The notes beneath the pieces are model-generated. The model was not told the DNA's origin and searched no databases. It worked only from the letters and a program-made list of their open reading frames with translations. The translations under genes were made by a program, and so were the position numbers. A DNA stretch of 64,000 nt from Octopus bimaculoides (taxonomy: Eukaryota), in contig NC_068987.1 of NCBI RefSeq assembly GCF_001194135.2, forward strand, positions 24,517,587 through 24,581,586. Reading direction: 5' to 3'. Below, in pieces: positions 2,399 to 58,518 of this stretch. How positions within the stretch are numbered: position 1 is the first letter of the stretch; the number at the start of each line of letters is the position of its first letter.

Positions 2399-3412
2399 AT
2401 GACAGAGAGACTGTGCGAGAATCTGGTTTATGAAGAAACACAAAATGAGAATAATGAATTTCCTCACCAAAGTGAAAATGTAGGGAAGAAATCATGCCAC
2501 TGTGACATCAAAGTAAAAACCTTTACCAGAAGTGAAGATATCAATGAACATAAATTATTTCACACAAATTCAAATGTTTACCATTGTAAAAATTGTAGTA
2601 AAGGGTTCAGTACAGATGCTGCTTTGGCATCACACAAATGTACACCTACTGGTGGCAAACCATACCACTGCAACATCTGTGGTAAAACATTTTCTCGAAC
2701 TGGACATTTGACTAGTCACAAACGTACACACACTGGAGAGAAGCCATTCCACTGTGAAATCTGTGGTAAAACTTTCTCTCATAACTGTGACTTGACTGTT
2801 CACAAACGTACTCATACAGGTGAGAAACCATACCACTGTAATATTTGTGGGAAAACATTCTCTCGCAATGATGTTTTAACAATTCACAAACGTACTCACA
2901 CAGGTGAAAAACCATACCACTGTAATGTCTGTGGTAAAACGTTTTCTGTGAATGAACATTTGACTCGTCATATACGCACACACACAGGTGAGAGACCATA
3001 CTACTGTGCATTGTGTGGTAAGACATTTTCTTCTAATAGTACTCTGACTGTTCATAAACGTACTCACACAGGTGAGAAACCATATCACTGCAATATCTGT
3101 GGTAAAACATTCTCTCATAACTGTGACTTAACTGTTCACAAACGTACTCACACAGGTGAAAAACCATACCACTGTGAATTGTGTGGAAGAACATTCTCTT
3201 TTAACTGTACATTAAATGTTCACAAACGTACTCACACAGGTGAGAAACTATACGGTTGTGATACCTGTGGTAAATCATTCTCTCGTAATGATATCTTGAC
3301 AGTTCATAAACGAACACACACAGGTGAGAAACCATACAACTGTGAGTTGTGTGGTAAAACATTCTCTTCTAATAGTACATTGGCTGTTCACATACGTACT
3401 CACACACGTTAG
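2399..3412 (+). CDS. C2H2 zinc-finger protein, 337 aa: 9 canonical fingers plus 2 degenerate N-terminal fingers
   Basis: Open ORF with tandem CxxC-x12-HxxxH fingers and TGEKPY linkers. Candidate splice acceptor (ctttcag) ends at 1951. Confidence 0.93.
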
Positions 3413-9079: not shown

Positions 9080-10096
9080 ATGATGGGAAATGATTTATGC
9101 AAGAACCAACTTAAATGTGAAAAACAGTTGAAAAGGGTTGATTTTCCTGATGAGATGCTGAAAGAGATAGGAAAATCATCATACCACTGTGATATCTGTC
9201 AAAAGTCATTCTCTCAAAAAAGTAATCTAACTACTCACAAACGTATTCATACAGGGGAAAAACCATACTGCTGTGATATTTGTGGTAAATCATTCTGTCA
9301 GAGATATAGCTTAACTAGTCACAGACATATTCATACTGGAGAGAAACTGCATCAATGTGATATCTGTGGTAGATCATTTGCTGAAGGAAGTGTCTTAACT
9401 AAACACAAACGCATTCATACAGGAGAAAAACCATACAACTGTAATATCTGTGGTAAATCATTCTCTGCAAGAAGTAGCTTAACTACTCACAAAAATATCC
9501 ACACAGGAGAGAAGCCATATCACTGTGATCTGTGTAGTAAATCATTCTCTGCTAGAAGTAGCTTAATTAATCACAAATACATTCATACAGGAGAGAAGCC
9601 ACATTGCTGTGATATCTGTGGTAAATCATTCTCTCGAAATGGTGACTTAATTATACACAAACGCATTCATACAGGAGAGAAGCCATATCAGTGTGATATC
9701 TGTGGTAAATCTTTCTCTGAAGGCAGTGTCTTAACTAAACACAGACGCATTCATACAGGTGAGAAACCTTATCATTGTGATATCTGTGGTAAATCATTCT
9801 CGCAGACAGGCCACTTAACAACTCACATACTTATTCATACAATAGAGAAGCCATATCATTGTAGTATCTGCAATAAATCATTCTCTGAAATGCGCAAATT
9901 AATTACTCATGAGCGAATTCATACAGGAGAGAAGCCATATCACTGTGATATTTGTGGTAAATCATTCTCTGAAGGAACCGTCTTAAATAAACACAAACGT
10001 ATTCATACAGGAGAAAAACCATATCACTGTAATACCTGTGGTAAATCATTCTCTCAGACAGGTCATTTAAAAACTCACAAACACATTCATACATGA
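9080..10096 (+). CDS. C2H2 zinc-finger protein, 338 aa, 11 fingers
   Basis: Tandem fingers with TGEKPY linkers. Polypyrimidine tract plus aatttcag acceptor ends at 8725. Confidence 0.93.
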   Translation: MMGNDLCKNQLKCEKQLKRVDFPDEMLKEIGKSSYHCDICQKSFSQKSNLTTHKRIHTGEKPYCCDICGKSFCQRYSLTSHRHIHTGEKLHQCDICGRSFAEGSVLTKHKRIHTGEKPYNCNICGKSFSARSSLTTHKNIHTGEKPYHCDLCSKSFSARSSLINHKYIHTGEKPHCCDICGKSFSRNGDLIIHKRIHTGEKPYQCDICGKSFSEGSVLTKHRRIHTGEKPYHCDICGKSFSQTGHLTTHILIHTIEKPYHCSICNKSFSEMRKLITHERIHTGEKPYHCDICGKSFSEGTVLNKHKRIHTGEKPYHCNTCGKSFSQTGHLKTHKHIHT

Positions 10097-16296: not shown

Positions 16297-17073
<777 letters not shown>

Positions 17074-17694: not shown

Positions 17695-20650
17695 AGGCAT
17701 GTTGATGCATGTTGCATTCAAGAGGTAAGGTGGCAGGGAGCTACAGCCAGTTTCCTCAAAGGCAGATACATGGGTATAAAATCTGGGAAGGTGACAATGA
17801 CAGTGTAAGTAGTGTGGGCATACTTCTTGTCAAGGACATCCTAAGACCCAAAAGAAATGAAGCTAGTATACTCTGCTGGATATGCAATGTCAGTGTGCAT
17901 GTACAACAGAAATAGATGGATAGGGTCATAGAGGTAGTCAGAGTGTGCAATAGAGTACTTAAGCTCAGGCTAGTTTTGCAGAATAGAACAGCAACAATTA
18001 TCTCTGCTTATGCCCACCAAGCAGGTCTACCAAATGAACAAAAGGATTGCTTTTATGATATTCCTCTGCACACTACCTTAGAGACGAATGACAATGATCT
18101 CATTTGCATGACTGGGGATTTCAATGGGAATGTTTCATCCACGGTGTACATGGGGGCTATGAAATTGGCTCCTGAAACAAAGAGGGGACAAGGCTACTGG
18201 AGTTCTGTTATGTGAATAACCTATTGATCTGCAACACCAACTCCAAGAAGCCAGCCAGCACCTGATAACCTACCAGTCAATTAATCATGCTAGCCAGATT
18301 AATTACATTCTCATCAGAGAACTGGATACATGGTTGCTCCTAAATACAAAGACCTTCCCTGGTGAAGAATGTACCCCCTGGCATAGACTAGTCATTAATG
18401 ACTTTAGACTCCAGGCCAGAAGGATGCCAAGAAATAGAGCAATCTGGAAAAGAAGGATTTGGAAGCTTAAGGATCCTTTATATCGTCAGAGATTTAGGGA
18501 CAACCTAATTGAGGAATTTGATGAGAGGGAGGAGAAACTACAGACTTGTAACATAGAGGGCAACTGGGAATTCCTGTGGGACAACTTGCTGAGTGCCACA
18601 GACTAAATCTGCAGCCAGTGCAAAGTCCCATCCAGACCTAGCCTAATGGTGGTGGTGGTGGTGGTGGAACGATACTCGACAAGGCTATTAGAGCAAAGAA
18701 GCAGGTCCGGAAGGATTGGATGCATGGGGTAACAGATAGCCAGAAGAGAAGCTAGGGGACAGGTATATCTAGCCAGGGAAGAAGCAGAAAGAAGAAGTTT
18801 GCCTATGTTCAGCAACGTGAGAACCAGAGACTTGAAGTGTTTTGGATTGCAGGGCAGTCTGTGAGAGAAAATTGTGATGACATAGGAGAGAAATGTGTCC
18901 ATATGGATGATGGTGCACTTGCATTTAATGATTCTGCAAAGAAAGCGGCTTAGAAATGCCATTATGAAAGGCTGCTAAATGTGGAGAATGAATGGGAAAA
19001 GAAGAATCTGCCAAATGTTGTCCCAACTGAGGGACCAGCTATCCTAATTGACAGTAGATTAATAGATAAAACAATTAAGGACATGAAGACAGGGAAAGCC
19101 CCTAGCTCATCAGGAATCTCCACTGAGATGCTGAAAACATCTGGCATAGTAGGGTATAGCCTACTCATCCATATAGTTAATCAGGTTGTCTATGAGGGAG
19201 TCATAGCCAATGATTCGTGTAGTAGCATCATAGTCAAATGCTACAAAAGTAAAGGTGATGTTTTAAACAGAAATAATTACAGAGGCATCAAACTACTGGA
19301 CCAGGTGAAGAAAGTCACAGAGAGGGTCATAGTTCAATTAATTAGTGAGAGAATTAGGCTAGATGTGATGCAGTTTAGATTTGAGTTAGGCAGTAAGTGG
19401 TGTAGGTTATGGTCAAGTCACCTGTATTGTAAATCAGGTAGTTCACAAAGGAGTCAAACCCAATGACTGGAGTAGCAGCACCATAGTCAACTGCTAAAAA
19501 GGTAAAGGTGATGCTTTAGATAGAAATAACTACAGGGGGTATCAAACTGCTGGATCATGGAGAGGGTCATAGCCCAACTAATTAGGGAGAGAGTCTGTTT
19601 ACATGAGATGCAGTTCAGTTTTGTGCCAGGTAGAAACACTACTGATGCTATATTTCTGGTAAGGCAACTGCAGGAGAAATGCCTACCCAAAGACAAACTT
19701 CTATACTTGGCTTTTGTTGACTTGGAGAAAGCCTTTGACAGGGTCCCCTGATCCCTTATCTGGTGGGCGATGTGGAAACTAGAGATAGACGAGTGGTTAA
19801 TAAGAGCTGTACATGGATGTTGTCAGTAAGGTAAGGGTTGGCAATTAGTATAGTGATGAATTTCGGGTAGAAGTAGGGATTCACCAAGGATCAGTCCTCA
19901 GCTCCCACTTATTCATCATAGTTCACCAGGCAATAACAGAGGCTGCACTTGGGAGTTCCTCTATGCTGATGACCTTGCTCGCATAACTGAATCACCACCA
20001 GAAGGGCCTTAGAGTCAATGTTGCAAAAACCAAAGACCTAGTTAGTAGGAAGGTGAACAAATCACAAATCCCTTCAGGTAGATGGCCCTGCTCGATCTGT
20101 AGAAAAGGCATAGGTAGAAACTCCATAAGACGTACCCAATGTAAGCTATGGACAAATAAGAGGTGCAGCAACATCAAAGGAAGGTTAACTTGTATGATAG
20201 CTTTTGTGTGCGGCAGATGCACAGGTGCAATAAACACCAAAGATTCTATCACATGCCAAGGGGAGAAACTAGAAGTAGTTGATAGCTTCTGATACCTAAG
20301 TGACCAAGTCCGTAGTGGGGGTGGATACTTGGAGAGCGTTGCCGCTAGAATAAGAATAGCCTGGGCAAAGTTCAGAAAGCTCCTACCTTTACTGGTGACA
20401 AAGGGCCATGACTGTTAAGAACATACGCAGGCTTGAAAGAAATGAAGCTAGTATGATCCACTGGATGTGTAATGTCAGTGTGCACACACAACAGAGTGCA
20501 AGTGCCCTGAGAGAAATGTTGGACATAAGAAGCATCAGATGTTCAATGTTAGCAAAACAAAATCTTGAATATGATGTGTTTGCAAAGGCTTGATAGAAAT
20601 GAAATGAGCATACACTATTCGATGTGTAATGTCAGTGTGTATGAATGACA
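17695..20650 (+). mobile_element. Near-full-length decayed RTE LINE (APE plus RT) with internal rearrangements
   Basis: CCIQEVRW, IISAYAHQAG, TGDFNG, YRGIKLLD, AFVDLEKAFDRVP, YADD region and C-terminal RNEASM; many stops and frameshifts. Confidence 0.92.
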
Positions 20651-27545: not shown

Positions 27546-28812
27546 ATTTATAGGAGTGTAGTGAGACATGTTAGCACTATTTTGTTCTGGCTGCATAACA
27601 GTTATGCTATGCCCGGCAACTTCCACTCGGCAGTGAAGCACACGTTTTTCAAAAGCAAAAGCCAATTGCTGTTGGACTGTCGAGACGAACCTAGTTTCTT
27701 TTGGTACTTGACAAGATGCAGTCTCTGATTTTTCGGTGAGATTCTGACTTGCCTTGCATGTCACTCATTGGATTTATTGCTTACATCTTGAAACTGGGGC
27801 TAATGCAGTTCCGCACCTTTCCTTGAAAAATGCATGTTATTGAAAAGTTTTTTTTTTCAGATTCCTATGTTTTAGATGTCGGAGATTACAAATATGCAAA
27901 AAAAGAAATTGGTGTTCCTTCGATATAACTCTACAAGATCAAAACATCAATTCGACTCTTTCCGTGAAAAGCTCTGCTATAACACGGCAATTCACTTTGG
28001 ATATCTTCATGACAGCAGCTGTCACAGAGATATCTGGAGCCAATTATCGAGTTATATCAAAGATATCTGAACTTAACTGTCAAAAGTTGTCGAGTTATAT
28101 CGAAGGAATGCCAAGAAATTTTTTAACCACCATCACCACTCCCCCTCCCATTAAAAATTTTGAACTTTTTCAAAATTTTTTTCTCCGTATGTTTTAGATG
28201 ACAGAGGTCCTGGATGTGCAAGAAACCACGTTTTCAAAATTTTAAATTCAATAAGCATATAGATAGGTGTATAAAGAGATAGATAGGAATGTCTTCCTGG
28301 GGCTAAAAACAACAGTAACACCGTCTTCTATAGGACTGCCACATTTAGTTTAGACAAATATACTTTATGAATAAACGAACAAGGATAAATAGATAAACAG
28401 ATAAATAAAGAAATGGATGAAAACGTTCAAAATTTAAAATTGGAGAAGGGGTAAAATTTGAACCCCTTATTAAACTTTATAACATTAATTATTAAATATT
28501 AATATTTGTTTCTCATAAAATGGTGTATATTTAAAGTAGTTGTATGATGTCAACTTAATGTGACAGTCCCACGAAGGGAATAATACTACTGCCATTTAGC
28601 CCTAGGAAGCAGCACCACTTCCTGTCGGCCTTGACATAATTCCTGTGTCCTTATGTTTACAAGGGGGAGACAAGCACCCCCCACCCAGCTAAGCCTGCAT
28701 CCTGAGACATGTTTCTGAGTCTTTGCTCGTCTGGAGATGTGAATGTGTTTCACTAGAATTATTATATGTTTACAAGAACTAGACGCATTGCCAACTAGCA
28801 GGCCATTGCTAC

Positions 28813-28855
28813 TCCAGACTGATGACTAGCAAAGACTCAGAAACATGTCTCTGGA
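28813..28855 (+). ncRNA. Minimal type I hammerhead ribozyme motif (Penelope/retrozyme type), copy 1
   Basis: TCCAGA-CTGATGA-ctagcaaagactca-GAAA-CATG-TC-TCTGGA: 6-bp stem I, catalytic boxes, palindromic stem III (ACATGT), predicted cleavage after C28849. Stem II is weak in this copy. Confidence 0.75.
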
Positions 28856-29156
28856 TGCAGGCTTAGCTGGGTGGGGGTGCTTGTCTCTTGTAAACATAAG
28901 GACACAGGAAATGTGTCAAGGCCGACAGGAAGCGGTGCTGCTTCCTAGGGCTAAATGGCAGTAGTATTATTCCCTTTGTGGGACTGTCACATTAAGTTGA
29001 CAGCATACAACTACTTTATCGCATCACTACTGCATAAATCTCTCTGCGAGATTTAGAAATGTATTATTTCTATTTTTGAAATCAGTGAATGTGTTTCGCT
29101 AGAATTATTATATGTTTACGAGAGCTAGACAGGCATCTCCAACTAGCAGGCCATTG

Positions 29157-31535
29157 TCTTTGGATACCATCTATGATTTTTTTTTTGACGTTTTTCCTTG
29201 CTGCCAGAGTGAGTTCGTGTTTTGCTTGTGTCAACTGTTTTTTTCTGTGAACTGTTTGTTGTTATTTTCACCCTTCGGGGCGGAAAATTTCTGTGGAATT
29301 GAAAATTGTTTTCTTGTCTAACGACAAGTATGGAGCTAAATATAGCATTGCAGAAGGAATTCTCCAGAGTGGGAGAGGTCAACCCAGTTGAAAAGTGAAC
29401 AAAGGAAACCAAGTTTCTCCAAGGCAGTGAGCAGAGGCTCAATAGAATTGGAAGTAACAGTGGACAAGTTGTTTCAGTATAGACAACTGATACAGAAAGT
29501 GGGCGAAAAAACAAAACTAATACTGCCCCCAGAGTTGATAAACGCAATTAAAGAAAAAATTAGTTGTATATAAAGTATACAACTTAAAGGAGAAGAGGAT
29601 AGCCGAAGTAAAGACGGATATTGTGGAGAGATGTTTGGCTCCAATTTAGCCAAAAGTTCGCTACGTTAGTCGAGGCACAAGAAGTGCAACTGTTGAAGTG
29701 CATTTCGACTCGGCTAACGTAGCAGAGGAGATTTCCACACAAACCTTAAAAAATGAAAGCATTATGCTGCTGCCCACTTACATGGGACGCAGAACGGCTC
29801 GAATCACAGTGGAAGACATACCGGTCGGGTATGATGTAATGTGGGTGGCAGCAGCGGTATCTTTTGACGCGGAATAAAATTTAAACATCCTGAGTATGAG
29901 GAAGGAGGAGGCAATCAACTGGAGAGGGCAGATGCTAGAAATAGTTGTTCAAGAAAGTTTGCCTGACAGTCCTGATCAGGAAGAGCTTGGACTTACAGAT
30001 AAGTACTGTCTTTTTGGACCCAGAAGGTAGGCTGGTCGTCCTCGATGTAACAAGAGTAAGCAGCCCTTCAGGTTGGTAGCTGTCTATGCTCCAAATGAGC
30101 ATGGGCAGTCTGGTTTTTTTCGGAACCTGGAGTACTTTCTACTGATGTCAAAAACAGTAGTTTTGTTAGGGGACTTCAACACTATCCTTGATGCATGCAT
30201 CGATAGTGTAGGCTCCACCAATAGAAAAGGGAATCCATGCTTCAAGGGTCTACTAGACCGCTACCGACTGGATGAGCCAAGCATTCCACAGTGGATGTGG
30301 AGTACCAACGACGGCTCATGCAGATCGTATATAGACAGAATATTCGTCAAGGAAAGAGATAAACATAGCCTTAGTTGTCCACAATTTTGTATTGTGCTTT
30401 ACATGGATCACAAGCTTGTGATGTGTAAGGTACAGGTAGATAAGTGTCATAGACAGGGACCAGGGTATTGGAAAATGAACAAGTCTATTTTGGCTTGTGA
30501 AGCTTTCCGTACCCTGATTAAGGAGTTAGTTCAGAGGGCGTTATGTGGCACCATCATTAATAATAGATGGTGGCACGCCCTCAAGAGAGCCATCCGTCTT
30601 GAGTCCATTAGATTTAGCAAGCAGCTAAGTGTAGATAGGACTAGAATAGAGGGTGACTTAGTTAAGAGCCTAGATGAGGCAATGGAATCTGGCTCCACAC
30701 CTAGAGTGTTGGTGGCGAGAATGGTCTTGTACCGTCACCTCAATGCCAAACATGAAGGGTGCTGAGTTAGAGCTAATGTACGTGCTGGGAAACGAGAAGG
30801 TATTAATGTAGCCAGATGGGCTCATCACGTGGAGAGTCAGAAGGGCAAAAAGTCCTGTATTAAGTCTTTAACTGACGAACAGGGTTGCAAGATCTATGGA
30901 CAGGAGGAGATGCGAAAGGCTTTTCACCAGCATTTTGTTCAGTTGTTCAGGGAGAGCGGTACGCTTGAGCGCGGGGAGCCCTTAAGGGACTTCCTAGCTG
31001 GCGGGCCTCGACTCTCGGCAAATGAAGCTGGATGCTGTGAAGGGCCGATCACTCCCACGGAGGTAAGAGAGGTGCTGGCCGAGTGCACTGGGGAAGAGTC
31101 TCCGGGACTGGATGGTCTGCCCTGTGAGTTTTACCGTTTAATGCCGGACTTGTTTGGGGATGTCCTGGCTGGCGTCTATGCAAACTGACAGCAGAATGGG
31201 AGTATTCCCAGTGCTGTAAGCCGTGGAGTAGTGACGCTGGTCCAGAAAGACCCAAGCAAGGGGGATAGCATTAGCAACTATCGGCCCATAACTCTACTTA
31301 ATGTAGAGTTTAATTTCTGTGTAATTTTAAAATGATAACCAAAAAAAAAAAAACAGATTAGTTTAAGTTCTCTTAATTTTTTATCAAGTTCTCAATTTTA
31401 ATTTCATTGATTAAATTGTACATAATCGTTAAAACCAAAAATTGTATATAAGCATGATCTCATTCATTTTGTGTAATTGTCTGTCTTGTGCCGTCCTCAT
31501 CTATGTGTGATCTGTAGTGATCATAATAAAGATTT
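29157..31535 (+). mobile_element. Tx1/L1-clade LINE, internally deleted and decayed (ORF1 remnant, APE endonuclease, start of reverse transcriptase (RT), 3' end)
   Basis: LVAVYAPN, LLGDFN and SYIDRIFV (APE); SPGLDGLPCEFY and NYRPITLLN (RT start); AATAAA near the 3' end; 17-bp TSD CAACTAGCAGGCCATTG at 29140-29156 and 31536-31552. Confidence 0.9.
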
Positions 31536-31556
31536 CAACTAGCAGGCCATTGCTAC

Positions 31557-31599
31557 TCTAGACTGATGACTAGCAAAGATTCAGAAATATTTCTCTGGA
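31557..31599 (+). ncRNA. Degenerate hammerhead ribozyme motif, copy 2
   Basis: TCTAGA-CTGATGA-ctagcaaagattca-GAAA-TATT-TC-TCTGGA; stems I and III carry substitutions. Confidence 0.55.
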
Positions 31600-32244
31600 T
31601 GCAGGCTTAGCTGGGTGGGGGTGCTTGTTTCCCCCTTGTAAACAAAGGACACAGGAAATGTGTCAAGGCTGACCGGAAGTGGTGCTGGTTCCTAGGGCTA
31701 AATAGCAGTAGTATTATTCCCTCCGTGGGACTGTCACATTAAGTTGACAGCATAAAACTACTTTATTGTATCACTACTGCATAAATCTCTGAGAGATTTA
31801 GAAATGTATTATTTCTATTTTTGAAATCAGTGGGTGTATATTTAACTTACATTATATTATTAAAGCAAACACAAGTAAAACGCAAATTCTTTTCATTTTA
31901 ATGTTTTTGTCTGTATTTAATTTCGATTTGTATATGTTTGTCAATTTGCTACGATCTCTTTAAAGTAAACAAAATCAAAAACTTAAAGGTAAACAAGTAC
32001 CATAAATGGTGCAGGTAAAGATCATGGACCACACTCTCATGGCGATTTATTTTTTTTGTGTTCTTTTTTTTACAGGAACATACTATGTCAAAGGTGGAGA
32101 TTCCGAATCTGCAAAAAAAAACCTGCATTTTAAAAATTCATCAGTTTGGATGAATTTCCCAGTGCAAAAACATTGAAATAGCTTAAAAAAATTTATTATC
32201 AGATGTTCTGTACAAAAAAAATGAGATGAAGCCTTGTGGATCTT

Positions 32245-34635: not shown

Positions 34636-35435
34636 CCATCATCATCATCATCATCATCATCGTTTAACGTCTGCTTTCCATGCTAGCATGGGTTGGACGA
34701 TTTGACTGAGGACTGGTGAAACCGGATGGCAACACCAGGCTCCAGTCTGATTTGGCAGAGNNNNNNNNNNNNNNNNNNNNNNNNNNNNNNNNNNNNNNNN
34801 NNNNNNNNNNNNNNNNNNNNNNNNNNNNNNNNNNNNNNNNNNNNNNNNNNNNNNNNNNNNNNNNNNNNNNNNNNNNNNNNNNNNNNNNNNNNNNNNNNNN
34901 NNNNNNNNNNNNNNNNNNNNNNNNNNNNNNNNNNNNNNNNNNNNNNNNNNNNNNNNNNNNNNNNNNNNNNNNNNNNNNNNNNNNNNNNNNNNNNNNNNNN
35001 NNNNNNNNNNNNNNNNNNNNNNNNNNNNNNNNNNNNNNNNNNNNNNNNNNNNNNNNNNNNNNNNNNNNNNNNNNNNNNNNNNNNNNNNNNNNNNNNNNNN
35101 NNNNNNNNTTCACGCAGCTATCCTCCTCCATTCTCACCACATGTCCATACCAGCGCAATCGTCTCTCTTGCACGCCACAACTGATGCTTCTAATGTTCAG
35201 CTTTTCTCTCAAGATACTTACACTCTGACGGGTATTCACATTGACATTACACATCCAACGGAGCATACTGGCTTCATTCCTTGCGAGCTTACGTATGTCC
35301 TCAGCAGTTACAGCCCATGTTTCACTGCCATGTAGCATGGTTGTTCGTACGCATGCGTCATACAGTCTGCCTTTTACTCTGAGTGAGAGTCCCTTTGTCG
35401 CCAGCAGGGGTAAGAGCTCTCTAAACTTTGCCCAG
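34636..35435 (-). mobile_element. 5'-truncated RTE LINE (C-terminus plus 3' UTR) in a FAM32A intron
   Basis: AWAKFRELLPLL...RNEASMLRW...LRWYGHV; (GAT)n tail. Confidence 0.92.
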
Positions 35436-36309
35436 GCTACCACTGGTTTTAAATTGAAATTAATATTCAATTTTCACCCTCAGTATATATATATATATAT
35501 ATATATATAGGATAGACTTCTTTTAGTTTCAATTTAACTTGAAGCTATAGCAGTGCATATTAGTATAGTAAGAGTTGATGTAAAAAGACTGAACCCAAAA
35601 CCATTTAGTTTGGATGGGAACTTTCTAACCACAAAGCCATGCCTGCATCTTATTGTAACAATAATAGTGATGTTAGTAGTAGTAGTAAAATGATACTGGT
35701 GATGGTAGAAATCACTCAATTTCCAGACAATACACCCAAAACTGCCATAGATATTGCCTTAAAACCATACCAAGACATTCTTGGTGCAATTACATCACAA
35801 ATGAAAAAGTCATGGAAAGGTCTGGGTTGAATAACCTACAGATATCTTCACAGAGTCCAATGGGAATCTCTCATGAGTAGAAGCTATAGTGGAGGCATAG
35901 AAGGTAAGGCAGATCTAAAGCCTGAATGAGGACAGTGAAGGAAGTCTTCATAGACATGAGCCTGGCCAGGGAGCAGGCTCATGACAGGGCTCGCAACTGA
36001 GCTGGGTAGAGATTTCTCATCACTCAACACTCCATGAGGAACTAAGACTAAGACATTATTCAATGTGTCTTTACTGTTCTGATTTGCAGGAAAAGGGTGA
36101 GGGGGATTTTGCTGCTATTTCTAGCAAGTTGAATAGCATCAGAGAGACTTTCTCATTGGTTTCTTGATGTCCACATTTACATTAGTGATAATGAAAGATC
36201 ATGCTGGTGATGATGACAACTATGACAAGTGGATAGACGATGAACACAATGACAGATGGTGATAATGATAATTATAATGAACTAGAGCTAGATTAAAGAA
36301 GAATGTTAC

Positions 36310-46498: not shown

Positions 46499-47761
46499 TT
46501 GGGTTGTCTGGAAAGTTCATGCCGATATTTAAAGGAAAGAAAAAGGTCAATAAATACTTGTCATTACATTTTTAATCAACCAAATATGAACCATTTTGTT
46601 GCACAATGTGTCTCCATCTTTCCTTTAACTTGAAAATCCCCTCTTCCCAGAATTGAGGTGGTTTCATGGCAAAGAATTCATCAAGGTATCTTTTTACGTC
46701 TTCCAAGGAATTGAAATTTTTACCATTAAGACTATTCTGCAGAGACCTGAATAAGTGGAAATTCGAAGGAGCAATATCTGGTGAATATGGAGGGTGGGGT
46801 GACACATCCGAGCCGAGCTGCAGCAATTTTTGTCTGGTTCCCCAAAAAACATGTGGTCTTGCATTATCAGGTTGGAAAACAACACCCTTCCTGTTGGCCA
46901 ATTCTAGACGTTTCTCTTGAGTTGCTGCGTTTAACTCGTCCAGTTGTGTGCAGTATTTCTCAGAATTAATTGTCTGGTTACTTGGGAGAAGCTCATAGTA
47001 CAGAATTCCTTTCCAATCCCACCAAACACAAAGCAAGACTTTTTTAGGCTGAAGACCCACTTTGGGGTGGCTAAGGGTGGCTCATGTCGCTTACTCCAGG
47101 ATCGCTTTCTCTGAACATTCCAGTAGATAATCCATTCCTCATCACCTGTCACAATTTGTTTTAAAAAAGGCATGTTTTCATTCCGTTTATAAAGCAAATC
47201 ACAGATGGAAATGAGATCCAAAAGATTGTTCTCATGTGGTACTCAAACATCGTTGCGATTTGTGTACCCAAGCTTTACCAGGTGCTCATGAATGACGGAT
47301 GAGGCTTTCTGCCAATTCTTGGGTTGTGCAATGTGGGTTATTCTCAATTAATGACTTGATTTGGTCATCATCTGTAGTGGATGGTCTGCCTGATTGCTCT
47401 TTATCAATAAGGCTACAATCTCCAGCTCGGAACCTTGTGAACCACTTCCATACAGTTCTTTCAGATAAAGGAACATCACCATAAACTACGCATATTTCTT
47501 TGGTTACTTGCGAGGCATTTTTCCCTTTATGGAAAAAGAAAAGCATCAAGTGCCAAAAATGAACTTTCTTATCTTCCATTTTAAAGGGTTACAGAATTAA
47601 CACAGGTTATAGGAACATAAACCTTCTTCCATGAAAAGATAGCTTAAGCTGTGCTCTAAATGGAGGTGTAGTCAAATCCTATTTTATGGACTCAACCATG
47701 TTCTAAAATAAGTTGAAAAGTAAGCTACTATAAATCGGCACGAACTTTCCGGACAACCCAA
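46499..47761 (-). mobile_element. Full-length mariner (D,D34D) transposon, 1263 bp, inactive
   Basis: About 27-bp TIRs TTGGGTTGTCYGGAAAGTTCRTGCCGAT; TA TSD at 46497-46498 and 47762-47763; frameshifted ORF with GDEEW, PDNARPH and YSPDIAPSNF (third catalytic Asp changed to Asn). Confidence 0.96.
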
Positions 47762-57334: not shown

Positions 57335-58190
57335 CATCATCATCATCATCGTCGTCGTTTAACGTCTACTTTCCATGCAGGCATNNNNNNNNNNACATCA
57401 TCATCATCATCGTCGTCGTTTAACGTCTACTTTCCATGCAGGCATGGGTTAGATGGTTTGACAGAGGGCTGGCAAGTCAGAAGGCTGCACCAGGCTCCAA
57501 TCCGATCTGGCAATGTTTCTACAGCTAGATGCCGTTCCTAATGTCAACCACTCTGAGACTGTAGTGGGTGCTGTTTACGTACCACTAGCATGAGGGCCAG
57601 TCAGGCAGTACTGGCATCGGCCACACTTGAATGGTGCTTTTTATGTGCCACTGGCACGGGAGCCAGTCAGGTGGCACTGGCAACGACCATGCTTGAATGG
57701 TGTTTTTTACGTGCCACTGGCATGAGACCAGTCAGCTAGCACTGGCATCGACACACTTGAATGGTGCTTTTTATGTGCCACAGGCACAGGTGTCAAGCGG
57801 TACTGTCATTGGCCACAACAACAACTTCACTTACCTCAACAGGTCTTCGCAAGCGCAGTTTATTACCCAATGGTTGAAAGGTACTCTTAAACGGGCTGGT
57901 TATGTTGCACTGGCATAGGCCACAGTTATGGTCTCACTTAGCTTGTCGGGTCTTCTCAAGCACAGCACATCTCCAAAGGTCTCGATCACTTGTCATCCCC
58001 TCGGTGACGCCCAACATTTGAAGGTTGTGCTTCAACACCTCATCCCAGGTCTTCCTGGGTCTACCTCTTCCACAGGTACCCTCTACTGCTAGGGTGTGAC
58101 ACTTTTTCACACAGATGTCCTTATCCATACACAACAAATGACCATACCAACACACTTGTCTCTCTTGTGCACTACATCTGATGCTTCTGT
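57335..58190 (-). mobile_element. 5'-truncated RTE LINE 3' end
   Basis: WYGHLL...GRGRPRKTWDEV, 3' UTR repeats and (GAT)n tail. Confidence 0.9.
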
Positions 58191-58331
58191 CCAGACAACT
58201 TTGGAATCTCCTGCAAGTCTCCTGGATGGTCTTCTTTTTTAAGTTGGCGAATGCTGCCATAATCTTTGCCTTCAGTTCATCTTTGGTGTTACAAGGAGTT
58301 TTGTTAGCCTCTTGCTTAACTGCATCCCACA
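58190..58331 (-). mobile_element. Tc1/mariner transposase C-terminal fragment
   Basis: YVWDAVKQEANKTPCNTKDELKAKIMAAFANL...CRRFQSCL. Confidence 0.75.
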
Positions 58332-58518
58332 CATATATTAGCGCTTGCATCCACTCTAATAGATTCTGAAGAATCTACTAGAATAGATGCAAGCGCTAAT
58401 ATATGATTTATAAAAACATCTGACATATTAATAAAAATCTGTAAATGTACAACCATCCAGATCTCTGAGTATCTTATTATTTTTTCTAATATATAATTCC
58501 TGTACACAACCTCCAAAC

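What the first reader, a model, noticed from the sequence alone, without database searches (positions are those of the whole stretch)
29140..31599. Tx1 LINE inserted 4 nt upstream of a hammerhead and bracketed by two ribozymes
Seen in sequence: a 17-bp TSD CAACTAGCAGGCCATTG flanks the LINE. The uninterrupted site survives in unit 1 (28792-28808), which is an internal empty-site control. The insertion sits just before stem I of hammerhead copy 2, so predicted cleavage sites at 28849 and 31593 flank the whole LINE on its sense strand. Established: Tx1-clade LINEs often have sequence-specific endonucleases targeting multicopy repeats or small-RNA genes, and R2 elements use a self-cleaving ribozyme to release their RNA from co-transcripts. 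Inference: a Tx1 family may specifically target retrozyme units and use host ribozymes to define, or even circularise, its transcript. I do not know of a described case.
Basis: partly seen in the sequence, partly recalled or inferred. Interest (0 to 1): 0.85.

Follow-up and report, generated by a model that had tools for sequence, protein, structure and literature searches.

The report
Dead Tx1 LINE nested in hammerhead-like repeat
A broken Tx1-type jumping gene sits inside a short tandem repeat that carries a degraded hammerhead-ribozyme-like motif; this looks like an ordinary transposon-in-transposon insertion, and nothing shows that the element targets the repeat or uses its ribozymes.

Summary
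The structural observation holds. A 2,379-bp LINE (29157-31535, + strand) is flanked by a perfect 17-bp duplication, CAACTAGCAGGCCATTG. It lies inside unit 2 of a 346-bp tandem repeat, and unit 1 keeps the uninterrupted site. The LINE scores closer to Xenopus Tx1 than to human L1. It is a dead copy with one frameshift, two in-frame stops and about 2 kb of RT and C-terminus missing.

The "hammerheads" are not confirmed. Rfam gives no hammerhead hit even at E<=10 on 81 nt. Helix II forms none of the pairs next to the core (no G10.1-C11.1). Copy 2 has lost GUC and the palindromic helix III. A motif of this quality without helix II turns up in about 2% of random 64-kb windows.

The predicted cut sites lie 307 nt upstream and 58 nt downstream of the LINE ends, so they cannot define its termini. 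Site-specific targeting could not be tested because no same-family copy was reachable. Relatives at 37-51% identity have unrelated flanks.

New point: the whole repeat cluster is itself one retroposed insert, with a 13-bp TSD and a 5'-inverted partial unit (twin-priming-like).

Most likely this is ordinary nesting in a repeat-rich cephalopod genome. Targeting remains a minority possibility of about 0.15-0.2.

The parts
28522..28534 (.). Left copy of the outer 13-bp target-site duplication GGTGTATATTTAA, flanking the whole repeat cluster
   Evidence: Identical 13-mer at 31833-31845. A common substring of 13 or more occurs in 3 of 2000 shuffles of the 60-bp flanks.
28535..28738 (-). Inverted partial unit (reverse complement of about unit positions 74-283). 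It lacks TGATGAC of the hammerhead-like core
   Evidence: blastn 28731-28532 against unit positions 86-280, 94%. Inverted repeats I1 and I3. Junction detail and 3-nt microhomology with the TSD.
28739..29084 (+). Unit 1 of the 346-bp repeat, intact. Strongly self-paired as RNA
   Evidence: RNA fold -117.6 kcal/mol, z = -6.7. GC 41.6%.
28792..28808 (+). Uninterrupted target site CAACTAGCAGGCCATTG (empty-site control). It lies in the 5' arm of a 137-nt hairpin that extends helix I
   Evidence: Hairpin 28764-28900, -54.2 kcal/mol, z = -5.5.
28813..28855 (+). Hammerhead-like motif 1: helix I UCCAGA/UCUGGA, CUGAUGA 28819-28825, helix II segment 28826-28839 (unpaired next to the core), GAAA 28840-28843, ACAUGU, GUC, nominal cut after 28849
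   Evidence: Sequence. No Rfam hammerhead hit. Helix II count 0.
29085..29156 (+). 5' part of unit 2, ending in the left TSD copy (29140-29156)
   Evidence: blastn unit positions 1-70, 90%. Family D8.
29157..31535 (+). Tx1-type LINE, dead copy. 5' UTR about 29157-29330. ORF1-like 29331-29877. ORF2 from ATG 29896, covering the endonuclease and the RT N-terminus up to YRPITLLN at about 31311. AT-rich tail 31312-31535
   Evidence: Translations. Pfam Exo_endo_phos, weak. Homologues. Tx1 against L1 scores. Frameshift near 30028-30050. Stops at 30763-30765 and 31186-31188.
31497..31535 (+). Conserved 3' terminus of the LINE lineage (CTATGTGTGATCTGTAGTGATCATAATAAAGATTT). It has no poly(A)
   Evidence: Aligns with the 3' ends of relatives L001, L007 (two copies) and L006.
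31536..31832 (+). 3' part of unit 2, starting with the right TSD copy (31536-31552) and ending at the cluster's 3' boundary ...CAGTG
   Evidence: blastn unit positions 54-346, 92%..
31557..31599 (+). Hammerhead-like motif 2, further decayed: helix I with a U.G pair, GAAAUAUUUC (no GUC, helix III not palindromic), nominal cut after 31593
31833..31845 (.). Right copy of the outer 13-bp TSD GGTGTATATTTAA

Best explanation
This is a two-layer nested retroelement with no functional link between the layers.

Layer 1. A multimeric RNA of a 346-nt, highly structured, retrozyme-like repeat was reverse-transcribed into the genome by a LINE-type (target-primed) machinery. That event left a 13-bp TSD, two tandem units and a 5'-inverted partial unit, as twin priming produces.

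Layer 2. A Tx1-clade LINE was integrated by target-primed reverse transcription into unit 2. The bottom strand was nicked at 5'-...GCTAGTTG^GAGATG-3' and the top strand 17 nt downstream, giving the 17-bp TSD. This happened either afterwards or already in the source array.

The LINE copy is now dead. The hammerhead-like motif of the repeat is at best a decayed relic. Its closeness to the insertion point is coincidental.

Shown: the anatomy, both TSDs, the empty site, Tx1 affinity, the defects of the copy, and the lack of a canonical helix II. Inferred: twin priming, the order of events, and the absence of targeting.
For: - TSDs, empty site and unit collinearity.
- Outer 13-bp TSD with the inverted segment abutting it through 3-nt microhomology.
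- LINE identity and defects.
- Only one LINE and one repeat cluster in 64 kb.
- No hammerhead in Rfam at any threshold.
- Helix II absent and chance rate 2.2% per window.
- Copy 2 and the inverted copy carry further core lesions.
- Nominal cut sites are 307 nt and 58 nt away from the LINE ends, whereas the TSD abuts the LINE's own 5' end and its lineage-conserved 3' terminus.
- Relatives at 37-51% aa identity have unrelated 3' flanks.
- The window is rich in transposable elements (other RT fragments, a mariner-like transposase, zinc-finger gene cluster).
- Octopus genomes are reported as about 66% repeats, with 12.9% LINE, 11.6% SINE and 13 recently active L1-Tx1 families (PMC13282606). Landing in a repeat is therefore the default outcome.
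Against: - Many Tx1-clade families are target-specific, including for other transposons and satellites, with TSDs of similar length (16 bp for Tx1-Mar/SINEU-3; PMC4494074). The prior for targeting is therefore not small.
- The nick site is not the A/T-rich L1 type, and the copy has no poly(A).
- The relatives examined belong to other families, so their flanks are weak evidence.
- The hammerhead-like motif has canonical metazoan type I spacing: 6-bp helix I, 4+6+4 nt for helix II, and a 2-bp palindromic helix III (PMC4209133). It sits at the tip of a significant hairpin. It may be a real relic, and the family consensus might be active.
Confidence: 0.7

Rival explanations
1. This Tx1 family is sequence-specific. 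Its endonuclease recognises the site around CAACTAGCAGGCCATTG in this repeat family, as Tx1 does with Tx1D and Tx1-Mar with Mariner-N4_AMi. The insertion is therefore targeted, but ribozymes play no part.
For: - The Tx1 clade is known for target preference, including transposons and satellites (PMC4494074).
- The element is nearer to Tx1 than to L1.
- The 17-bp TSD is similar to the 16 bp of Tx1-Mar targets.
- The nick site GTTG^GAGA is not A/T-rich, and there is no poly(A) tail.
- A 37%-identical relative forms head-to-tail arrays (L006). Three L001-like copies are followed by (ATT)n-like sequence. Both hint at non-random integration in the lineage.
Against: - There is a single instance.
- No second copy of the family was found in the window or in any reachable collection.
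- A solitary copy of the L006 family has a different 3' flank.
- The flanks of the L007 copies do not resemble the unit.
Confidence: 0.18
2. The LINE exploits the flanking hammerheads of the repeat: co-transcripts are cut at 28849 and 31593, releasing and possibly circularising a 2.7-kb RNA that carries the LINE, analogous to R2's use of a 5' ribozyme.
For: - Hammerhead-like motifs lie on the LINE's sense strand on both sides.
- Unit 1's motif meets the core, helix I and palindromic helix III criteria.
- Animal retrozymes are transcribed as multimers and circularised (PMC7229834).
Against: - No Rfam hammerhead hit.
- No helix II pairs next to the core, and no G10.1-C11.1, which is described as highly conserved (PMC4209133).
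- The downstream motif has lost GUC and the helix III palindrome.
- The cut sites are 307 nt and 58 nt outside the LINE, so they would not give LINE-length RNA.
- The TSD shows this copy integrated with its own termini, including the lineage-conserved 3' end.
- The LINE copy lacks most of the RT.
Confidence: 0.03
3. Order-of-events variant, compatible with the best explanation. The LINE entered the repeat at the source locus, and the whole unit-LINE-unit composite was then retroposed here as one 3.3-kb RNA. Other genomic copies with identical flanks could then exist without any targeting.
For: - The outer 13-bp TSD encloses the LINE as well as the units.
- Both TSDs are perfect, so their relative ages cannot be resolved.
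- Units 1 and 2 already differ by about 8%. This suggests divergence in a source array.
Against: - Nothing direct.
- A 3.3-kb chimeric template is less common than a short one.
- No second composite copy was seen.
Confidence: 0.25

Closest known systems
Target-specific Tx1-clade LINEs (Tx1 in Tx1D, Tx1-Mar in Mariner-N4_AMi, Keno in U2 snRNA genes, Kibi and Koshi in microsatellites; Kojima and Fujiwara 2004; PMC4494074)
   Same: APE endonuclease plus RT element that scores closer to Xenopus Tx1 ORF2 than to L1. Inserted in another repeat with a 17-bp TSD, no poly(A), and a nick site that is not A/T-rich.
   Different: Specificity is defined by many copies sharing a target. Here only one copy is available, and relatives have other flanks. 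This copy also lacks most of the RT and the C-terminal zinc-binding region.
Animal non-LTR retrozymes (Cervera and de la Pena 2020, PMC7229834)
   Same: 346-nt unit in tandem, GC 41.6%, strongly self-paired RNA, TSD longer than 4 bp, and a type-I-like hammerhead layout with 6-bp helix I and a short palindromic helix III.
   Different: The hammerhead is not detected by Rfam and has no helix II pairs next to the core. Only 2.6 units are present. Expression and circularity are unknown. The 5' inversion and 13-bp TSD point to LINE-type mobilisation, whereas Penelope-like elements are the favoured partner in the literature (10.64898/2026.07.22.740005).
R2 and other LINEs processed by self-cleaving ribozymes (HDV-like ribozyme at the 5' junction; from established knowledge, also cited in PMC4494074)
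   Same: The idea that a LINE co-transcribed with its target is released by a ribozyme.
   Different: In R2 the ribozyme is encoded by the element and cuts at or next to its 5' end. Here the motifs belong to the host repeat, lie 307 nt and 58 nt away from the ends, and are probably inactive.
L1-type 5'-inverted insertions by twin priming (established knowledge; Ostertag and Kazazian 2001)
   Same: A TSD-flanked insert whose 5' segment is inverted relative to the 3' segment. A short stretch is missing at the inversion junction, and there is microhomology at the target.
   Different: The template is a multimeric non-coding repeat RNA without poly(A), not an L1 mRNA.

Membership tests
Tx1 clade of non-LTR retrotransposons | N-terminal APE-type endonuclease followed by RT in one ORF2 | tested here: met
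   Pfam Exo_endo_phos hit, weak (E = 8e-4, below the curated cut-off) on the decayed copy. Collinear match to endonuclease plus RT of relatives carrying PF03372 and PF00078.
Tx1 clade of non-LTR retrotransposons | RT/ORF2 closer to Tx1 references than to the sister L1 clade | tested here: met
   phmmer, Z = 177635. Window protein: 88 bits to Xenopus Tx1 ORF2 (P0307) against 55 bits to human L1 ORF2p. Relative L001 RT: 264 against 146 bits. No full phylogeny with all clades was possible.
Tx1 clade of non-LTR retrotransposons | Complete RT plus C-terminal zinc-binding region | tested here: not met
   In this copy homology stops at YRPITLLN (about 31311) and resumes only in the 3' UTR. Relatives have RVT_1 plus zf-RVT. 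This is a defect of the copy, not of the family.
Tx1 clade of non-LTR retrotransposons | Target-sequence preference (20% or more of copies in one kind of sequence, PMC4494074) | not testable with these tools
   One copy in the window. No same-family sequences in the protein or DNA collections.
Hammerhead ribozyme, type I | Conserved core CUGAUGA ... GAAA with a cleavage triplet NUH | tested here: met
   Unit 1: CUGAUGA 28819-28825, GAAA 28840-28843, GUC 28847-28849. Unit 2 keeps CUGAUGA and GAAA but has UUC. The inverted copy lacks UGAUGAC.
Hammerhead ribozyme, type I | Helix II closing the core, with the G10.1-C11.1 pair | tested here: not met
   CUAG/CUCA gives C.A and U.C next to the core and only two inner pairs. 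Helix II count from the core is 0 in both units. G10.1-C11.1 is described as highly conserved (PMC4209133).
Hammerhead ribozyme, type I | Helix I and helix III | tested here: met
   Unit 1 has a 6-bp helix I and A-U plus C-G with the palindromic ACAUGU, the dimer-type helix III of metazoan hammerheads. Unit 2 keeps helix I with a U.G pair but has lost helix III.
Hammerhead ribozyme, type I | Match to curated covariance models | tested here: not met
   No hammerhead family at gathering score, at E<=10 on 3.7 kb, or at E<=10 on 81 nt.
Hammerhead ribozyme, type I | Self-cleavage | not testable with these tools
   Needs in-vitro transcription of monomer and dimer constructs.
Animal non-LTR retrozyme | Tandem units of about 170-400 nt, GC below 50%, TSD longer than 4 bp when present (PMC7229834) | tested here: met
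   346-bp period, two units plus an inverted partial unit. GC 41.6% and 13-bp outer TSD.
Animal non-LTR retrozyme | Active type I hammerhead in each unit | tested here: inconclusive
   A hammerhead-like layout is present, but helix II is missing and Rfam gives no match. The family consensus is unavailable.
Animal non-LTR retrozyme | Highly self-paired RNA expressed as linear and circular monomers | tested here: inconclusive
   Self-pairing is met (z = -6.7). Expression and circularity cannot be tested here.
Ribozyme-terminated LINE (R2-like processing) | Ribozyme cleavage at or next to the element's own 5' end | tested here: not met
   The nearest upstream nominal cut (after 28849) is 307 nt before the LINE 5' end (29157). 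No ribozyme family matches inside the LINE.

The most novel reading that the evidence does not exclude
An octopod Tx1 family is a site-specific LINE. Its target is a conserved site of about 17-25 bp in the 5' arm of the extended helix I of a retrozyme-like, hammerhead-derived repeat. That would make one retroelement parasitise the tandem copies of another, non-autonomous, possibly LINE-mobilised one. In the extreme version, read-through repeat transcripts carrying the LINE are processed or circularised by intact hammerheads in younger copies.
Probability: 0.15. Interest if true: 0.6.

Novelty: new member of a known kind. Interest (0 to 1): 0.28.

Why it matters
As it stands this is an ordinary nested transposon and matters little.

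Two things would make it worth a genome-wide follow-up. First, if the LINE family proved to be targeted to this repeat, it would add a retrozyme-like repeat to the list of Tx1 targets. It would also give a handle on how Tx1 endonucleases choose sites.

Second, and independent of the LINE, the repeat cluster itself shows hallmarks of LINE-type target-primed integration: a 13-bp TSD, a multimeric insert and a 5' inversion. This bears on the open question of whether LINEs or Penelope-like elements mobilise animal retrozymes. One locus with an unvalidated ribozyme cannot settle either point.

Tried and rejected
- **Rfam at three stringencies**. No hammerhead hit. The only hits were a spurious long-hairpin match (MIR2646, 43 bits against a cut-off of 245) and weak C/D-box snoRNA-like matches driven by UGAUGA. 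All rejected.
- **tRNA or SINE-head search**. Nothing found, despite an A-box-like GCTTAGCTGGGTGG.
- **Tandem Repeats Finder**. It does not report the 346-bp repeat because the LINE interrupts it.
- **Other repeat units outside the window.** One metagenome scan gave three 20-21-nt chance matches in microbial-mat contigs. The GTDB genome scan and the IMG/VR scan gave none.
- **Same-family LINE copies by protein**. The best hits were only 51% identical. The source genome's transposon ORFs appear not to be indexed.
- **L006 head-to-tail LINE array as a sign of site specificity.** The shared CTAGnAGG after the 3' end looked promising. A solitary copy of the same family (L011) has an unrelated flank, so that sequence is probably the next copy's 5' end.
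- **Hammerhead-like pattern in fetched relatives' loci**. One loose match in L007, far from the LINE. Not pursued.
- **Literature.** No paper links retrozymes or hammerheads with octopus, or Tx1 with hammerheads.
- **Similarity between the target 24-mer and LINE 31268-31291** (17/24). Judged probable chance, and it does not fit the geometry of priming.
Full report
**Anatomy**

The region contains a short repeat of 346 bp.
- Unit 1 is 28739-29084.
- Unit 2 starts at 29085, is broken after 29156, and resumes at 31536, running to 31832.
- Upstream, 28535-28738 is an inverted partial unit: the reverse complement of about unit positions 74-283, 94% identical.
- No other copy of the unit, and no other copy of the inserted element, exists in the 64-kb window.

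**The insertion and its TSD**

The 2,379 bp between 29157 and 31535 are flanked by two identical copies of CAACTAGCAGGCCATTG (29140-29156 and 31536-31552). In unit 1 the same 17-mer (28792-28808) is followed directly by CTACTCCAGACTGATGA, the sequence that follows the right-hand copy in unit 2. This is a textbook target-site duplication with an internal empty-site control.

From the geometry, the bottom strand was nicked at 5'-...GCTAGTTG^GAGATG-3' and the top strand 17 nt downstream. The target is not the A/T-rich L1 type, and the insert has no poly(A).

**What the insert is**

One reading frame carries four segments:
- an ORF1-like segment (29331-29877), whose RRM-like part matches ORF1 of an Argonauta hians relative;
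- an ORF2 start at 29896;
- a decayed APE endonuclease;
- the N-terminal part of an RT, up to the YRPITLLN motif at about 31311.

Coding homology then stops. The last roughly 40 nt (...CTATGTGTGATCTGTAGTGATCATAATAAAGATTT) align with the conserved 3' terminus of the same lineage in four other loci. The element therefore has authentic 5' and 3' ends, but about 2 kb is missing (most of RT, the zf-RVT region and part of the 3' UTR). ORF2 also has a frameshift near 30028-30050 and stops at 30763-30765 and 31186-31188. It is a dead, non-autonomous copy.

**Clade**

The closest proteins in the 5.8-billion-protein collection are only 51% identical. They come from metagenome contigs, and their relatives are annotated in Argonauta hians and Acanthosepion pharaonis, so the lineage is cephalopod.

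A third search brought in the Swiss-Prot reference Xenopus Tx1 ORF2 (P0307). phmmer scores at equal database size were as follows.

| Query | Xenopus Tx1 ORF2 (bits) | Human L1 ORF2p (bits) |
|---|---|---|
| Window protein | 88 | 55 |
| Relative L001 RT | 264 | 146 |

The Tx1 label is therefore supported, although no full clade phylogeny was possible.

**Are there hammerheads?**

On paper, unit 1 has:
- a 6-bp helix I (UCCAGA/UCUGGA);
- CUGAUGA;
- 14 nt in place of helix II;
- GAAA;
- a 2-bp helix III with the palindrome ACAUGU;
- GUC.

This is the layout described for metazoan type I hammerheads that act as dimers (PMC4209133). It sits at the tip of a significant 137-nt hairpin (z = -5.5).

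Four things count against it:
- Rfam 15 finds no hammerhead at gathering score, at E<=10 on 3.7 kb, or at E<=10 on just 81 nt.
- The helix II segment CUAG-CAAAGA-CUCA gives C.A and U.C next to the catalytic core and only two inner pairs. The highly conserved G10.1-C11.1 pair is absent.
- Unit 2 reads GAAAUAUUUC, so GUC and the palindrome are lost.
- The inverted copy lacks TGATGAC.

In first-order Markov simulations of the window, three motif definitions occurred at these rates.

| Motif definition | Share of simulated 64-kb windows with at least one hit |
|---|---|
| Core plus helix I of at least 5 bp | 10% |
| Stricter form met by unit 1 (helix I of at least 6 bp plus a 15.2-16.2 pair) | 2.2% |
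| Form with helix II of at least 3 bp | 0.3% |

A plain chance hit also lies at 9147-9183 inside a zinc-finger ORF. I read the motif as suggestive of a decayed hammerhead relic, not as a demonstrated ribozyme. "Bracketed by two ribozymes" is not established.

The whole cluster (28535-31832) is flanked by a perfect 13-bp direct repeat, GGTGTATATTTAA (28522-28534 and 31833-31845). A match that long occurs in 3 of 2000 shuffles of the 60-bp flanks.

Reading left to right, the insert consists of:
1. the reverse complement of unit positions about 283 down to about 74;
2. two sense units ending at ...CAGTG.

The inverted segment abuts the TSD with 3 nt of microhomology. This is the arrangement expected from target-primed reverse transcription of a multimeric RNA with twin priming (inference, from established knowledge of L1 5' inversions).

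Together with the unit size, GC of 41.6%, strong self-pairing (z = -6.7) and a TSD longer than 4 bp, this fits the description of animal non-LTR retrozymes (PMC7229834), apart from the unvalidated ribozyme. It also suggests LINE-type mobilisation, whereas Penelope-like elements are currently favoured (10.64898/2026.07.22.740005).

The LINE may have entered before or after this event. The data cannot order them.

**Testing the targeting idea**

The decisive test needs other copies of the same family, and none could be reached. The protein collection has none. DNA scans of the metagenome, GTDB and IMG/VR collections for the unit gave only chance 20-mers or nothing.

Relatives that share the conserved 3' terminus are followed by:
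- TTAATTACTT... and CTATTTTTAAAA... (two Argonauta copies);
- GATTATTAC (L001) and a long (ATT)n (L010);
- TGGAAGAAATATATC... (solitary L011 copy) against the next element's 5' end in the L006 tandem array.

None resembles the unit. These are different families (37-51% identity), so this counts only weakly against targeting.

On the other side, many Tx1 families are target-specific, including for other transposons and satellites, with TSDs of 16 bp (PMC4494074). A real preference therefore cannot be dismissed; I put it near 0.15-0.2.

Octopus genomes are reported as about 66% repeats, with 13 recently active L1-Tx1 families (PMC13282606). The window itself is full of transposon fragments. Landing inside a repeat is the default outcome.

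**Testing the ribozyme-use idea**

Apart from the doubtful catalytic status, the geometry argues against it. The nominal cut sites lie 307 nt before the LINE's 5' end and 58 nt after its 3' end. In contrast, the TSD abuts the LINE's own termini, including the lineage-conserved 3' end. This copy therefore integrated from an RNA with LINE-defined ends, not ribozyme-defined ones. R2-type processing requires cleavage at the element's 5' junction, which is not the case here. No ribozyme family matches inside the LINE.

**Verdict**

This is a dead, internally deleted Tx1-type LINE nested in a retrozyme-like repeat that carries a degraded hammerhead-like motif, and the repeat cluster is itself a retroposed insert. 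The description is largely right, the ribozyme claim is unconfirmed, and the proposed mechanism is unsupported. It is ordinary unless a genome-wide flank survey shows otherwise.

Noticed in passing
window 28522-28534 and 31833-31845, with 28535-28738: The whole repeat cluster, LINE included, is bracketed by a perfect 13-bp direct repeat, GGTGTATATTTAA. It begins with a 5'-inverted partial unit. This looks like a single LINE-type (twin-priming) retroposition of a multimeric repeat RNA.
   Followed up: partly
window 28532-28731 and 28824-29018: The inverted partial unit and unit 1 form a hairpin with arms of about 200 bp (94-96% complementary, 92-nt loop). This explains the spurious Rfam MIR2646 hit. 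Any read-through transcript would be long dsRNA.
   Followed up: no
L006 1-22307 (ENA ERZ21867824, ctg108305l): A Tx1-like LINE with a 643-aa ORF1 and an 1158-aa ORF2, 37% identical to the window's, is arranged as a head-to-tail tandem array. The period is about 6.43 kb and copies are 98-99% identical. A solitary 5'-truncated copy of the same family in L011 has an unrelated 3' flank.
   Followed up: partly
L010 about 2010-2105; L001 3869-3877; L007 12286-12305: In the closest fuller relatives, the conserved 3' terminus ...GTGGCCAATAAAGAAAY is followed by (ATT)n (more than 30 repeats in L010) or degenerate ATT-like sequence. This is either a templated microsatellite tail or a microsatellite target, as in the Tx1-clade Kibi and Koshi families.
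   Followed up: partly
window 31268-31291: Inside the LINE, right at the last RT motif before the deletion, GCATTAGCAACTATCGGCCCATAA matches the target-site 24-mer GCATTGCCAACTAGCAGGCCATTG at 17 of 24 positions. This is probably chance.
   Followed up: no
window 9147-9183: A second CTGATGA...GAAA...TH motif with a 5-bp closing helix lies inside a C2H2 zinc-finger ORF. It is a clear chance match and shows how easily loose hammerhead patterns arise.
   Followed up: yes
window 2399-3412 (+), 9080-10096 (+), 16297-17064 (-); also 18981-19466, 34664-35470, 46572-47060, 57934-58350: The window is a cluster of C2H2 zinc-finger ORFs interspersed with fragments of other RTs and a mariner-like transposase. 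It has 3,374 N in assembly gaps and overall GC of 37%.
   Followed up: no
P0112; L001 and L009 (ERZ25513664); L002 (JGI 3300037538); L010 (JGI 3300045642): Cephalopod-type Tx1 LINE sequences turn up in metagenome assemblies. One protein is labelled as coming from a Herbaspirillum MAG, which is likely host-DNA contamination of those data sets.
   Followed up: no
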